Shown here one piece after another: positions 10,124 to 16,100 of a stretch of DNA of 64,000 bases. Positions within the stretch are counted from its first letter, which is position 1. Every line of letters starts with the position of its first letter. The notes beneath the pieces are model-generated. The model saw nothing but the letters and a program-made list of their open reading frames with translations. It had not been told where the DNA came from and ran no database searches. Source of the DNA: Mytilus californianus (Eukaryota); the NCBI RefSeq assembly GCF_021869535.1, contig NW_026262723.1, positions 41,168,001 to 41,232,000 on the forward strand, read 5' to 3'. A program made the translations under genes and the position numbers.

Positions 10124-13100
10124 ATGGCGGAGCAAATGACGCTTAGAGGGACCCTCCAAGGGCATGGAGGATGGGTGACACAGATCGCCACTACTCCCCA
10201 ATATCCTGATATGGTGTTGTCGTCCTCTCGGGGTAAAATCTCTTGCATCTGTTTGTTCTATTTATGACCTGAAGGTTTTGCACATACTCTCATTTGTAAT
10301 AAATCTTCAAGCCGTTGCACCCACTCTTATTTTTAATTTGAAACGTTTTCGATGTTTGTTGCATACTGTTAGTATGTTTACATGTACATTTTTTGTCTTT
10401 TTTGAATGCCGGTAGAACTTTTGACAGCTCCAAATGGTGAGGACCAGCAGATTTTCTTCAAGGACCACTAGGGAAAAAAAGATTTAAAAAACTCTGGCAT
10501 CTACTAGATATATATATATATATATAAGTAAATTTTAGTTGTGAAAAATTAAGTTTGAAATACTATCTACTTAATGGGCTGAATCATTGGACCAATTTGT
10601 GGTAACCTGTGAATCTCTTAACTGTAAAGTGAGGGGCCTCGGACAAAGTGTAGTCAGTTGATAACGAATTTAAGTTTGTTTATCTACAATTTGTATTTTC
10701 AGACAAGACCTTGATTATGTGGAAGTTGACCAGAGATGAAACAAATTATGGTTTACCACTCAGATGTTTAAGAGGTCATGGTCACTTTGTATCAGATGTA
10801 GTCATGTCATCTGATGGCCAGTTTGCCTTGTCTGGATCATGGGATAAGACTCTACGTCTGTGGGATCTTGGAGCGTAAGTCATTTCTAATAGTCTGCTTA
10901 AATAGTAATCTTGAATGTTCTTTAAAAGTTTCATAAAATTGACTTGACAGCTTACAACTGATGGCAATATTAAGGTGACTCCTAGTGTTAACTAATGTTG
11001 TACTCTTAAAGTAATGGATAACCAATACAAAATAAATATGTCTTTGACGAAACACAATCAGCGATAATCATTTTTCTGTACAATTAGCTGATTCCTTGTA
11101 AGGCCAATAAAAAATATATGTCTGTTTAAGGTTACATACTTTTAAAAAATAGGGAAGGGAGGTCGGTATTTCCATTTTATTTTATTTTTTCGTTTTAGTT
11201 TTTGTGACATGATTTTGAGTCATGCTGTTTCGTCTTGTCGTGGTCCGAGTTGATCTTGGGCAGAGTTTCCCCGTATTTTTAATGATTGGATTATTTCCCT
11301 TGGTAATTGGTTGGCAAAGTGTTTATTTCATCACACGAGTTGCGAATTTCCTAAAAACAACTGTCATTCACGATTGTGAACATTGGGATGTATCAGGCAA
11401 TTGATTTATATTGTTTGCAACACTAACTTCGCTTTTGACACGAGTTCAGTTTATTTTTCACTTTACGACGGAAATAAAATGACAGGGTCAGCACTCAAAA
11501 GTAGGGTCGGTCAGGTAACCGTAAACAGACATATATATTTTTTTTTGGCCTAAATTTCATTTTGTCATTACAATTCTACATGTACAATGTTACATACAAA
11601 CTATCAGAGCACATCCAAAATGCCTTTGAAAAGGAGGGGGGCTAAAAATGAAAGGACTGAATAATCCTCAATGAGACAACTATGCCAAAGACGGAAGAAG
11701 TTTCACCATGAGAAATTATATCATGAACAAACACTCAATACCTGTCAAATTGTAGTATGGAATATACACCTGAAATACATAAAATTAATTTACTGCATCT
11801 ATTGAAAACTTTCTTCATGCAAAGAGTAAACACATTGTTAATATATATCTGAATTTGATATCATTCCGTAAGATATAAATGTGATAAGATATTAATTTGA
11901 CTTTTCATACTTTTTCAGAGGAACAACAACCCGTTTGTTTGACAACCATGACAAAGATGTCCTCAGTGTAGCCTTCTCTGCTGACAACAGACAAATTGTT
12001 TCAGGTTCCAGAGATAAATCTATCAAACTGTGGAACACCCTTGGTGTCTGTAAATACACCATTCAGGTACTTTTTCAAATATTACAATGAAAGATGATCT
12101 GATTTAATAGTATTCTTATGAAGCCTCTGATATAATAGATAGATGATAATTTTGAATTTTGAGAGGATATTTAAAACATGAGAGAACCGCAGAAGTGAGG
12201 GAATATCAAAATTTGAAACAAAATTATCTCTCCAGTCCACGTGTTCTGTTTTTACCAATGATTATGAAAATATACATGTATTAGCTATTGATCAACATGA
12301 AACTACTAAATGTATGAGGTTAAACAAACAACTCTGCAGGAATGTTTTCTTGACTCTTGGCAAATTTCCTAAACATTAGGTCATTGTGCTGCCAACACTT
12401 GCCTTTAACTTGACTTGATGTAAATAACTATTAGTTTCAAATGGATTTTAACAGATGATCTATCTTACTTGATGCCAATAACCTGAAGTATCCATTGAAT
12501 ATTATTATATGGTCTAAAAAGGGTTTTTTGAAATTTGGAAACCATATTCAGTCTTGAGAGTAATTCCCTAGGTTACAAACCCACAAATTTAACATTTACT
12601 TATTAGTCTTTGTGCTGTGAATAAGTACCTTAAAAAAAAGCAAAAAATCAAGTCAACTTTGCATTAGGGACCTAGAACCCTTGTTTCCTTACAATTTCTA
12701 AATTTATCAATAGAAAATTTAAAATATGTTTATATAAAATCATGTTCATGTAGAACCACAACACTTCTGGTCTAATGGTAACCTCAGGTACTAAAGTCAG
12801 CCAGCAGTGGTATCGACCCAGTGCTAGTAAATAATGTAATAAAAGTTTATAATTCAAATTACATTAGTTTATTTTGTTAATACCTAAGATAGCAGAAATT
12901 TGAAATTATCTTTTGAATTGTCTTGTCTACAGGATGAAGGCCATAGTGATTGGGTATCCTGTGTTAGATTTTCACCAAATACAGCCAATCCAATTATTGT
13001 ATCCTGTGGATGGGACAAACATGTTAAGGTAAGGATGTCATTTATTTTGATTTTCGTTTGTTTAAAATAAATTCAAACATTGAAAACACATTTTTATACG

Positions 13101-16100
13101 GCCGTTTACAGGATGTATTATGGTATAACGTTGTCCTTCTGTCGTCAACATGTCGAACATTAACTCAAAAACGCTTTAACCAATTTGCATGAAACTTTGG
13201 TGAATTGTTTGTATCTATTGACCTGAGCACTCTTTCGTTTTTTATAAATTTTAAATTTAACGTTTCTGAGTTCTGGGGTTTTATTCATTACAAAAAGGGG
13301 GTTTTCCAGTTTTCGGACAATAACTCAAAAACGCTTTCACCAATTTGCAAGAAACTTTGGTGAATTGCTTATATATATGGCCATGAGCTCCCTTTTGATT
13401 TTTATAAATTTTAGATTTTACATTTCCGAGTTAATGGGTTTTATTCATTAAAAACGGAGGGTTTCCAGTTTTTGGACAATAACTCAAAAATGTTTAAGCA
13501 TTTTTCATGATTTATGTGATTTTATTCATAAAAAAGGGGGGTTTTCCACTTTTCAGACAGTGCTTTGAGCAGTTATCATGAGACTTTGGTGATGGGTTTA
13601 TATCGATTAAGATAACCTCCTTTAGTTTTTCATGAATTTCTGATATGACATTGAGAAGTTATTGAACTTTATTCTTTGAAAAAGCGACGGGCGTATCATG
13701 CGCGCATGGCACAGCTGTTTATTCATTAAAGCATTGGTTTCCATTTCGCTTAGTTTTATTTTCAAAACTACTTAGTCTTTAATAAATGCAATTGTGCTTG
13801 ACCTGTTGCAAACTAAATAATTCAGGGACTTTGATTTAACTTTATTCCAGAAAATTCATAGCAGTAATTGTGTTTTTGTATTACAGGTTTGGAATTTGAC
13901 TAACTGTAAACTGAAAACCAACCACATTGGACATACTGGTTACTTGAATACTGTTACTGTTTCTCCTGATGGCTCACTGTGTGCATCTGGAGGAAAGGTT
14001 TGTATGACATAGATCTAAATAAAAACACTAACCTGACACCAAGGGATTGTATCTCACGGCTTTGCTGTCAACTTCTATGACCTCCAAAAAACACTGATAA
14101 AAAAGTTGCTACATGTTATAATAATTGGAACTTTCATCCTTTATTTAATATTTGAAATATAGATAAATATTTTTGAAGACATAGTGATAGATGTAGATAC
14201 CTTTGTTTGTGTTGCCAATGATTATTACAATACATGTATTAGCTATTGATAAACATGAAACTATTGATTTCTATGAGGCATTATTGATATCTACACCAAG
14301 CTCAAGAAAAATAGCATGTAATTTTTTTTGGAAAGATTGGAAAATTTTCAAAAAACACTGGCCTCATCAAAACAGGATGTAGCCAGGTTAGCTACTAAAT
14401 CTATAGTGTACACACACCTGACATATAGCTCTCAGTAATTTCAATTACTGTGTACATTTGCACAAACAAACTTAAAAATTTTGGATCATGTAGGTTTTGA
14501 AAAACAAAAGTTTTTTTACTTAGCCAGGCAAAAGTGGACTGGTGTAGGTTATAAGCAGTATATACCACATAAACCTATCATAAACACAGTACATAATCAA
14601 TTCTTACTTATATGGCACATTAAACTTTATCTTATCTGAGGGCTGTTCCATTTAAACATACATGGTACCCAGGGATGGCACTTTAAAAATGGAGAAACCA
14701 ACTATAGAGGCAATTTAGAATTTTTCTTTACGTTTTCACTGTTCAAAATAATTTTAACACTCGAGCTCACTCCCTGTGATTTCAAAGCACCTTTCCTGGG
14801 TCCCATGTATGTTTTTATGGAACAGCCCTTATATTGTTTCATTCATTAGAATAACTAGCATGCTAACTTAAAAATGGTTAAAACCTACAAAATAAAAGTA
14901 AATGAAACATCGTCTTAAACAATATCGATTGTAAAATGGTATACACTTACAGTTGAAAGCATAAATTTGCCTACAGCATGTACAGAATACAAAACACTTT
15001 AGCATGTATCAAGTGATCTTGTGATACCCAATGATTATATTTTTTCACAATTATTTGAAATCTTATGAAAAAATCCTGCAAATATGAGGGTATCTGGGTT
15101 AGCTTAAGACAAAAATGGATGTGAAAATTGTGATAGTTTACCTGGTTGGACTTGTCAGAGAGCATATATTTTACTTGATTATGTCAAAGGTCCTGTTCAA
15201 TGAAAGAATAAAATAAGTGTCCTTTATTACAATTTATTTATATATAACAATCATTGATTACAATGGTTTCATCACGTTGCTACAGGGTAGGTGATTCAGT
15301 CTTAAATTGCTCACTTACAACAGGGTTCTAAAAAAATCTCAGTAAGAAATTGCATTCAACTTATCATAAACAATACACGATCAAGTCTTATATGGCAAAT
15401 TTCTAACATGAAAAAGGGTCAAAATTCCAAACATAGAAAACAAATAAAGGAAAAGCTTTAATAAAACATGATAGATTGTTAAATGCCAATTGAATTTGAA
15501 TTAATAGATTGTTAAATGCCAATTAAAGTTGAATGGGTGCACTGTCAGTAGAAAGAATAAAGTTCGAACTCAAAACTTTAGGCTGATGTTGGTATAAAGT
15601 ATTAAGTTATCATGTGATGCCCAATGATTATATTTTTTCACATTCAATTGAAAAATAATGAAAAAATCCTGCAAATATGAGGGCATCTTATAGCTTAAAA
15701 TAAAAATGGATATGAAAATTGAAATAGTTCATATGATGACTCTGAAAATATAGTAAAAATCTATTAATATATCATGTGTATCTTATGTAATGTTGCTCTA
15801 TCGGTGAAAAATTGCAACTGATGATTGGTTATAATTGATTAAGCCAAACCAATCAATGTGATTATGGAGTCAATTTTTGTTTTAAGAGCAAACAGCAACA
15901 TTTCAAATAAACATACACTGGACTTTAGCAACTAACAACCAATCAATCAAATAAACACATAACTATAGATAAATAAATATGAAATTTAATATGCTGACCA
16001 TGGGAGGGCTGTATAGCCAGTCAAGGTCGTTAAAAACTCCCATCATGAAATTTAACCATAGATTTTCCAGTTGGATTGCCTTATCCAATCATTTTTCTAT

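What the first reader, a model, noticed from the sequence alone, without database searches (positions are those of the whole stretch)
12251..14280. snoRNA family B: two intronic C/D RNAs with a 12-nt 18S guide pointing at a position I do not know as methylated in human
Seen: two ~70-nt copies (12251-12324 in intron 3, 14213-14280 in intron 5). They conserve only the boxes and ATACATGTATTAGCTA-TTGA, have compensatory terminal stems (ACC/GGT vs GCC/GGC), and differ in the D-side guide. Established: CATGTATTAGCT is the exact complement of conserved 18S AGCUAAUACAUG (human 166-177); human sites here are Am159, Am166, Um172 and Cm174. Inference: the D'+5 rule gives U169 (human numbering), a register shifted 3 nt from the SNORD45-type Um172 guide and possibly a lineage-specific modification.
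Basis: partly seen in the sequence, partly recalled or inferred. Interest (0 to 1): 0.75.

Follow-up and report, generated by a model that had tools for sequence, protein, structure and literature searches.

The report
Mussel RACK1 snoRNAs targeting 18S
Two small guide RNAs in introns of a mussel's RACK1 gene are very probably real box C/D snoRNAs whose shared 12-base guide points at an 18S rRNA uridine not known to be methylated in any mapped species; this is an ordinary kind of gene with a new predicted target, and neither the RNA nor the methyl group has been shown.

Summary
Window 12254-12320 (RACK1 intron 3) and 14213-14280 (intron 5) are two sense-strand C/D-type elements. Both have C=AUGAUUA, D'=UUGA, C'=AUGAAAC, D=AUGA and a covarying terminal stem. 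They share an identical 12-nt antisense element to the animal's own 18S (nt 161-172), at positions 2-13 upstream of D'.

The bodies are 80% identical while the flanks are at random level. The D-side guides differ and have no credible rRNA target. These are the only two 12-mers in the 14-kb gene region antisense to rRNA, and the genome holds no further copies, so this is not a repeat.

The +5 rule gives own U164, which is human U169. That site is not methylated in human, frog, fly or Arabidopsis maps.

New here: the genome also has four SNORD45-type snoRNAs in a transportin gene. Their guide abuts the D' box and points to own U167 (human Um172). Family B is therefore a separate guide shifted by 3 nt, not a sloppy Um172 guide. 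Its scaffold matches the three SNORD96-type snoRNAs in the same gene, noted earlier in this scan, which suggests duplication plus guide replacement.

Expression and methylation remain untested; the one RNA library laid showed nothing in the introns. Verdict: new member of a known kind, moderate interest.

The parts
12254..12320 (+). Family B copy 1 (B1), a box C/D snoRNA gene of about 67 nt in RACK1 intron 3, about 187-190 nt from the 5' splice site and about 607-610 nt from the 3' splice site
   Evidence: weak generic C/D hits in Rfam only (SNORD72 24.7 bits)
12258..12264 (+). B1 C box AUGAUUA (G6 replaced by U)
   Evidence: its partner change is in the D box
12275..12286 (+). B1 D' guide CAUGUAUUAGCU, 12 Watson-Crick pairs with own 18S nt 161-172, at positions 2-13 upstream of D'
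   Evidence: duplex -17.3 kcal/mol
12288..12291 (+). B1 D' box UUGA
   Evidence: invariant in all five RACK1 snoRNAs
12297..12303 (+). B1 C' box AUGAAAC
12304..12313 (+). B1 D-side spacer; no rRNA target better than chance
   Evidence: 57 of 150 shuffles score as well
12314..12317 (+). B1 D box AUGA (C1 replaced by A, restoring a U-A pair with C-box position 6)
14213..14280 (+). Family B copy 2 (B2), a box C/D snoRNA gene of 68 nt in RACK1 intron 5, 214 nt from the 5' splice site; the same 9.6-kb intron also holds two SNORD96-type copies
14218..14224 (+). B2 C box AUGAUUA
14233..14244 (+). B2 D' guide, identical to that of B1
14246..14249 (+). B2 D' box UUGA
14255..14261 (+). B2 C' box AUGAAAC
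14273..14276 (+). B2 D box AUGA, followed by the stem GGCA, which pairs with TGCC at 14213-16
12930..13026 (+). RACK1 exon 4 (host gene context)
   Evidence: spliced reads
13885..13998 (+). RACK1 exon 5 (host gene context)
   Evidence: spliced reads

Best explanation
B1 and B2 are paralogous intron-encoded box C/D snoRNAs. They are released from spliced RACK1 introns and assembled into fibrillarin snoRNPs. Their only conserved antisense element sits upstream of the D' box and pairs with 18S nt 161-172 of the pre-rRNA. It directs 2'-O-methylation of the nucleotide opposite the fifth guide position, own U164 (human-numbering U169). The C/D kink-turn uses a co-varied box pair (C AUGAUUA, D AUGA) in which the usual G-C pair is replaced by U-A. 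The D-side spacer is not a conserved guide. The family most likely arose by duplication of the neighbouring SNORD96-type snoRNA inside RACK1, followed by replacement of the guide. Shown here: the anatomy, the complementarity, the selective conservation, the uniqueness in the genome, and the existence of a separate Um172-register family. Inferred: processing into an RNA, snoRNP assembly, the methyl group itself, and the evolutionary route.
For: The anatomy and covarying stem are. The same box set occurs in five + strand elements in RACK1 introns, with 0 in shuffles. The sister family's D guide, read with D=AUGA and the +5 rule, gives own 5.8S G74. This corresponds to the known human Gm75 site of the RACK1-hosted SNORD96A, which calibrates the variant D box (the SNORD96A assignment is from my own knowledge and note s1-318105). 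There are 12 perfect pairs at positions 2-13 from D'. This satisfies the empirically strict rule of at least 9 pairs from positions 2-10 (PMC7668251). The body is conserved (0.80) while the flanks are random (0.50-0.52), and the D' guide is identical while the D spacer has diverged. That pattern argues for selection on the D' guide rather than gene conversion. Only these two copies in 1.65 Gb carry the boxes. A separate cluster of four snoRNAs at G000:C1:123438964-123447190 has the guide abutting D' (AUGA) and points to own U167, the human Um172 equivalent. It has the same layout as the Rfam SNORD45 consensus. The 3-nt offset of family B is therefore a distinct register in the same genome.
Against: There is no RNA evidence. 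The stranded RNA-seq run laid (about 6% of it read) has zero depth over both elements, although it shows essentially no unique intron signal at all and would not capture ~70-nt RNAs. The boxes are non-canonical, and C'/D' (AUGAAAC/UUGA) are degenerate. Both copies lie near the 5' splice site and far from the 3' splice site, and three snoRNAs share intron 5; this differs from the vertebrate optimum. Predicted guides do not always methylate: Arabidopsis snoR122 predicts Um168, but RiboMethSeq lists no site between Am162 and Um213. No orthologue from another species could be examined.
Confidence: 0.6

Rival explanations
1. The RNAs are made and bind 18S 161-172, but the degenerate C'/D' motif does not position fibrillarin. 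They would act only as pairing or chaperone RNAs, or compete with the Um172-type guides, and would not methylate U164.
For: C' (AUGAAAC) and D' (UUGA) depart from consensus. In the sister family A the region between C and D' appears to serve as accessory pairing rather than as a methylation guide (note s1-318105). The Arabidopsis snoR122 prediction was not confirmed by mapping. The binding site overlaps that of the transportin-hosted snoRNAs.
Against: The geometry is that of a working guide: 12 Watson-Crick pairs starting at position 2, with the GA of D' and C' intact. D' and C' are invariant across five paralogues whose spacers vary. The D' guide is the only conserved antisense element, so selection acts on it.
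Confidence: 0.18
2. Family B is the mussel's SNORD45-type guide for own U167 (human Um172). The functional D' would be the degenerate CUAU directly after CAUGUAUUAG, with the UUGA three bases on being incidental.
For: The string CAUGUAUUAGCU is the same as in the Rfam SNORD45 consensus up to the first two letters of its D' box. With CUAU as D' the +5 nucleotide is U167. D' boxes are often degenerate.
Against: CUAU lacks the GA needed for the sheared pairs. UUGA is invariant in all five RACK1 snoRNAs and sits 5-6 nt from a conserved C'. The genome already has four dedicated copies with the exact Um172 register. The SNORD45 covariance model gives no hit at E up to 10 on B1. The host gene is RACK1, and there is no A159-type D guide.
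Confidence: 0.1
3. The two elements are decaying duplicates of the SNORD96-type snoRNA that are no longer processed. The 18S match is fortuitous.
For: No reads lie over them. The D-side guide is degenerate. The intron position is unfavourable. No Rfam family reaches threshold.
Against: Two copies in different introns keep boxes, stem (by covariation) and a 21-nt block identical, while their flanks are at random identity. A perfect 12-mer antisense to rRNA occurs nowhere else in the 14-kb gene region.
Confidence: 0.1

Closest known systems
SNORD45A/B (Rfam RF00279; human 18S Um172 guide, RABGGTB introns)
   Same: It is an intronic C/D snoRNA whose D' guide contains CAUGUAUUAG and pairs with the same conserved 18S stretch (consensus shown).
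   Different: In SNORD45 the guide abuts the D' box, so the target is Um172. In family B three more bases separate them, so the target is the U169 equivalent. Family B has no D guide for A159, a different host gene, different boxes, and no model hit. The mussel's true SNORD45-type counterparts are the four copies on G000:C1 (16.4 bits, below the 42-bit threshold).
Arabidopsis snoR122 (Rfam RF02407; predicted 18S Um168 = human Um172)
   Same: It is about 70-74 nt long and has a D' guide to the same 18S helix. It is the weak Rfam hit on both copies (21.2 and 15.6 bits).
   Different: The scores are below the gathering score of 36. The register is the Um172 type. Its predicted site is not among the mapped Arabidopsis sites.
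SNORD96A (human RACK1-hosted C/D snoRNA for 5.8S Gm75) and its three mussel counterparts at window 15031, 15624, 25575
   Same: The host gene is the same, and so are the scaffold elements: CCAAUGAUUAU, UUGA, AUGAAA, UAUGAGG. This is probably the evolutionary source of family B.
   Different: Family B has lost the 5.8S guide on the D side and gained an 18S guide on the D' side.
SNORD44 (human 18S Am166) and plant snoR18 (Am162)
   Same: They target the same 18S segment, three nucleotides 5' of the predicted site (for the plant-human equivalence).
   Different: The target nucleotide and the guide register differ. No sequence relation was tested.

Membership tests
Box C/D methylation-guide snoRNA (class) | C box RUGAUGA near the 5' end and D box CUGA near the 3' end, able to form a kink-turn | tested here: met
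   The boxes are AUGAUUA and AUGA. The GA dinucleotides are intact, and the G6-C1 pair is replaced by U6-A1 in both copies and in 9 other mussel snoRNAs seen. This is a variant, not the consensus.
Box C/D methylation-guide snoRNA (class) | Short terminal stem joining the 5' and 3' ends | tested here: met
   The stems are ACC/GGT (extendable with one mismatch) and TGCC/GGCA, with an A-U to G-C covariation.
Box C/D methylation-guide snoRNA (class) | Antisense element of at least 9-10 nt ending 1-2 nt upstream of D or D', with the target opposite position 5 | tested here: met
   There are 12 Watson-Crick pairs at positions 2-13 from D', and position 5 lies opposite own 18S U164.
Box C/D methylation-guide snoRNA (class) | Internal D' and C' boxes | tested here: met
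   UUGA and AUGAAAC lie 5 nt apart and are conserved in both copies and, as AUGAAAA, in family A. Both are degenerate.
Box C/D methylation-guide snoRNA (class) | Sense orientation in an intron of an expressed host gene | tested here: met
   RACK1 exons 4 and 5 are spliced and abundant in RNA-seq, and the elements lie on the same strand.
Box C/D methylation-guide snoRNA (class) | Stable ~60-90-nt RNA bound by fibrillarin, Nop56, Nop58 and Snu13 | tested here: inconclusive
   There is zero depth in one cDNA RNA-seq run and in three contig sets. The library type is unsuitable, and no small-RNA run was available.
Box C/D methylation-guide snoRNA (class) | 2'-O-methyl present at the predicted nucleotide | not testable with these tools
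   This needs RiboMeth-seq or primer extension on mussel rRNA.
SNORD45 (RF00279) | Covariance-model score at or above the gathering score of 42 bits | tested here: not met
   No SNORD45 hit at E up to 10 on a 96-nt search of B1 or in the 9-kb scan.
SNORD45 (RF00279) | D' guide register that puts human U172 (own U167) opposite position 5 | tested here: not met
   The register is 3 nt off when read from UUGA.
snoR122 (RF02407) | Covariance-model score at or above the gathering score of 36 bits | tested here: not met
   B2 scores 21.2 bits and B1 15.6 bits.
SNORD96 type | D guide to 5.8S G75 (own G74) | tested here: not met
   The D-side spacers of family B have no 5.8S match at that site. Family A has it.

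The most novel reading that the evidence does not exclude
Mussel 18S rRNA carries a 2'-O-methyluridine at U164 (human U169), a position unmodified in every eukaryote mapped so far. It would be installed by a snoRNA family born inside RACK1 from a SNORD96-type duplicate. That family's new guide reads the same 18S stretch as the SNORD45-type guides but 3 nt out of register. One genome would then hold both registers, a caught-in-the-act example of how a new rRNA methylation site arises by a small shift between guide and D' box.
Probability: 0.5. Interest if true: 0.45.

Novelty: new member of a known kind. Interest (0 to 1): 0.36.

Why it matters
rRNA modification maps and snoRNA catalogues barely exist for molluscs; I found no paper on Mytilus snoRNAs. 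This locus gives a precise, cheap prediction: a methyl group on 18S U164 next to one on U167, each with its own snoRNA family. One RiboMeth-seq run on mussel RNA would test it. If confirmed, it adds a lineage-specific site in a segment that is also densely methylated in mammals (Am159, Am166, Um172, Cm174). It would also document snoRNA birth by intragenic duplication with guide turnover, and show that the U-A variant of the C/D kink-turn is fully functional. If not confirmed, it is one more example of a well-formed guide that does not methylate.

Tried and rejected
- **Rfam, whole window:** nothing at gathering thresholds. Permissive scans gave only generic sub-threshold C/D hits: SNORD72, SNORD34, snoR122, snR41.
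- **Family search for 18S in the own genome:** it failed twice. I replaced it with a pattern search. The first rDNA loci taken (C93, C94, C88) proved to be internally shortened 18S copies without 28S. The full unit on C113 (L024) was used instead.
- **D-side guides:** scanned against 18S, 5.8S, 28S and the spacers of the rDNA unit. The best hits (for example B1 with 28S nt 3383, 9 pairs including one G-U) are no better than shuffled guides, so they were rejected as guides. snRNAs were not scanned.
- **Conserved AACAUGAAACUA around C':** tested as possible accessory pairing with rRNA. It is weaker than shuffles, so this was rejected.
- **Single-strand folding of both RNAs:** z-scores are near 0, which is uninformative as expected for C/D RNAs.
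- **Repeat hypothesis:** the 17-mer with up to 1 mismatch occurs 30 times in 1.65 Gb. Among the 12 occurrences whose flanks were read (all three exact matches included), only the two window copies have boxes; the third exact match (G000:C2) is a bare chance match. The other 18 one-mismatch matches were not read. Rejected.
- **Orthologues:** two metagenome scans gave 0 hits and 14 hits, none with C/D architecture.
- **Expression:** This is not evidence of absence.
- **Literature:** no paper in the library names an rRNA Um169, Um165 or Um164.
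Full report
**1. What is there**

Reading the window and aligning the two stretches confirms two elements of 67-68 nt. B1 is at 12254-12320 and B2 at 14213-14280, both on the + strand.

Both have the same order of parts:
- a short 5' stem (ACC or TGCC);
- C box AUGAUUA;
- a spacer;
- the block AUACAUGUAUUAGCUA;
- UUGA;
- five bases;
- AUGAAAC;
- a 10-11-nt spacer that differs between the copies;
- AUGA;
- a 3' stem (GGT or GGCA).

The third stem pair covaries (A-U versus G-C).

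The host is RACK1. ORF pieces give its WD-repeat exons. Stranded RNA-seq reads define exon 4 (12930-13026) and exon 5 (13885-13998) with a GT..AG joint. Exon 3 ends near 12063-12066 and exon 6 starts near 23604; exon 7 lies near 26545-26720. B1 is therefore in intron 3 and B2 in intron 5, in the sense orientation. I read exons piecewise only and did not join them into a spliced model.

**2. Is it more than chance, and is it a repeat?**

- The bodies are 80% identical. The 100-nt flanks on either side are 50-51% identical, the same as shuffled sequence at 52%.
- Within window 10000-24000, only two + strand 12-mers are perfectly antisense to the animal's rRNAs. They are exactly the two guides.
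- None of 150 shuffled guides scored as well against rRNA.
- The full box architecture occurs five times in the window, all on the + strand and all in RACK1 introns, and never in 100 shuffles.
- In the 1.65-Gb assembly the 17-mer spanning guide and D' occurs exactly three times. Among the 12 occurrences whose flanks I read (the three exact matches and nine one-mismatch matches), only the two window copies carry boxes.

It is not a repeat family.

**3. The boxes**

AUGAUUA and AUGA depart from RUGAUGA and CUGA at C-box position 6 and D-box position 1. In the kink-turn these two positions pair with each other, so the G-C pair is replaced by U-A.

The same pair is used by the three SNORD96-type elements in RACK1 at 15031, 15624 and 25575. 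It is also used by snoRNAs in a transportin gene on another contig. It is therefore a habit of this genome, not a defect of these two copies.

The variant D box can be calibrated. Reading family A's conserved D guide with D=AUGA and the +5 rule gives own 5.8S G74 in the string UUGCAGG. By my knowledge this is the human Gm75 site guided by the RACK1-hosted SNORD96A.

**4. The target**

The animal's rDNA unit was located on G000:C113: 18S at L024 7568-9391, 5.8S at 7118-7271, 28S at 3079-6825, all on the minus strand.

Its 18S reads GGUAAUUCUAGAGCUAAUACAUGA, with AGCUAAUACAUG at nt 161-172. The guide makes 12 Watson-Crick pairs (-17.3 kcal/mol). These occupy positions 2-13 upstream of UUGA. The nucleotide opposite position 5 is U164.

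This meets the strict rule seen in zebrafish, at least nine pairs from positions 2-10 (PMC7668251).

Human numbering is own numbering plus 5. Own A154, A161, U167 and C169 have the letters of human Am159, Am166, Um172 and Cm174. The published equivalences Arabidopsis Am162 = human Am166 and Um168 = Um172 fit this offset. I did not fetch a human sequence. U164 is thus the human U169 position.

**5. Relation to the Um172 guides**

The Rfam consensus lines show that the guide string CAUGUAUUAG (plant: CACGUAUUAU) runs directly into the D' box. This holds for SNORD45 and for plant snoR122. That places U172 (plant U168) opposite position 5. In family B three extra bases lie between that string and the box.

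A genome-wide pattern search for the SNORD45 register found four clustered copies, at G000:C1:123438964, 123439615, 123440333 and 123447131. Each has:
- a perfect 7-bp stem (AUUCAGA/UCUGAAU);
- C box AUGAUUA;
- an invariant guide UCAUGUAUUAG directly followed by AUGA;
- a C'-like UGAUG;
- a final AUGA.

Their guide makes 11 perfect pairs with own 18S 163-173 and puts U167 opposite position 5. The SNORD45 model aligns to them with the same layout, though only at 16.4 bits. They lie among exons of a transportin-like gene (identification of the protein is from my own reading of the ORF pieces).

The mussel therefore already has dedicated Um172-type guides. Family B is a second family on the same 18S stretch, offset by 3 nt. 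This makes the reading "sloppy Um172 guide" unlikely.

**6. Is the U169 position known to be methylated anywhere?**

- **Human 18S:** sites in this segment are Am159, Um172 and Cm174 (PMC8797249; PMC8677024), plus Am166 (equivalence).
- **Xenopus:** lacks Am159, Um172 and Cm174 and gains nothing here.
- **Drosophila:** has no 18S Nm between Am28 and Gm393 (PMC11014333).
- **Arabidopsis:** RiboMethSeq lists Um123, Am162, Um213 and nothing between the last two (PMC8583080).
- **Full-text search:** searching for Um169, Um165 and Um164 found no rRNA paper.

The site would be lineage-specific. The Arabidopsis case is also a warning. snoR122 predicts Um168, is weakly expressed, and has no mapped site.

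**7. The D side and other elements**

The D-side spacers differ between B1 and B2. Their best rRNA or spacer matches are no better than shuffles. The conserved bases around C' show no meaningful complementarity to rRNA. The D' guide is the only conserved antisense element.

**8. Origin**

Family B shares several elements with family A: CCAAUGAUUAU, UUGA, AUGAAA and UAUGAGG. The simplest history is intragenic duplication of the SNORD96-type gene, decay of its 5.8S guide and gain of an 18S guide.

Family B's string ...UUAGCU-AUU-GA equals the SNORD45 consensus ...UUAGCUGA with three bases inserted in the D' box. This is suggestive but cannot be told apart from convergence.

**9. Expression**

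Laid on 12176-14425, the raw reads cover exons 4 and 5 at depths of hundreds to more than a thousand, on the strand expected for a + strand RNA. Both snoRNA bins are at zero.

The same library shows no unique intron signal at all. About 6% of it was read, and it is not a small-RNA library.

**10. Features that lower confidence**

- C'/D' are degenerate.
- Both copies sit about 190-215 nt from the 5' splice site and far from the 3' splice site.
- Intron 5 holds three snoRNAs.
- No orthologue could be examined; the metagenome scans gave nothing useful.

**11. Verdict**

These are very probably genuine C/D snoRNA genes (about 0.85). The specific claim of Um at own U164 I put at about 0.6.

It is a new member of a known kind: a snoRNA family without an Rfam model and with a new predicted target. 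Interest is moderate, because lineage-specific Nm sites are the rule and not the exception. The pairing of two registers in one genome and the clean experimental prediction give it some value.

Noticed in passing
G000:C1:123438955-123447200 (loci L039-L042, L049:6955-8400, L050:5120-5200): A cluster of four near-identical C/D snoRNAs lies in introns of a transportin-like gene. Each has a stem AUUCAGA/UCUGAAU, C box AUGAUUA, D' and D boxes AUGA, and an 11-nt guide to own 18S 163-173. The guide points to U167, the human Um172 equivalent, so these are SNORD45-type in layout. Their D-side spacers differ between copies.
   Followed up: partly
G000:C1:123432856, 123447897, 123448415 (L049:857-918; L050:5898-5958, 6416-6476): Three further C/D snoRNA candidates lie in the same host region, one with canonical boxes and two with GUGAUUA/AUGA. 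Their D guides make 11-12 pairs with own 28S and point to U3061 and C3063. Human equivalents were not checked.
   Followed up: no
window 15031-15089, 15624-15682 (intron 5) and 25575-25632 (intron 6): Three SNORD96-type snoRNAs have a D guide to own 5.8S G74 (the human Gm75 equivalent) and a conserved UUUUCACA element complementary to the adjacent 5.8S UGUGAA. With B2, intron 5 holds three snoRNAs, unlike the vertebrate one-per-intron habit.
   Followed up: partly
window 13076-13750 (RACK1 intron 4): This is a high-copy interspersed repeat. Reads and contigs pile up at depths of thousands with many variant letters and internal joints, in several organisms' runs. The weak Rfam 'snR75-like' hit at 13573-13645 lies inside it and is probably spurious.
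   Followed up: partly
window 17513-17610 (- strand): A long perfect hairpin scores 27.5 bits against mir-3129 (threshold 90; E 0.039). It is probably an inverted repeat in a repeat-rich stretch of intron 5. A neighbouring piece (window 17919-18001) recurs word for word at G000:C1:123443376.
   Followed up: no
G000:C93:3589288-3590309, C93 about 12.5 kb further on, C94:1692747-1693753, C88:101489398-101490284 (L020, L016, L023, L022): Several 18S-derived copies of only about 0.9-1.0 kb match the eukaryotic SSU model end to end (internally deleted). No 28S lies beside them. They are dispersed outside the complete rDNA units on C113 and C25.
   Followed up: no
G000:C2:64467309-64467325 (L001): This is the third exact genomic copy of the 17-mer CATGTATTAGCTATTGA. 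It has no C or D boxes or stem around it and is a chance match.
   Followed up: yes
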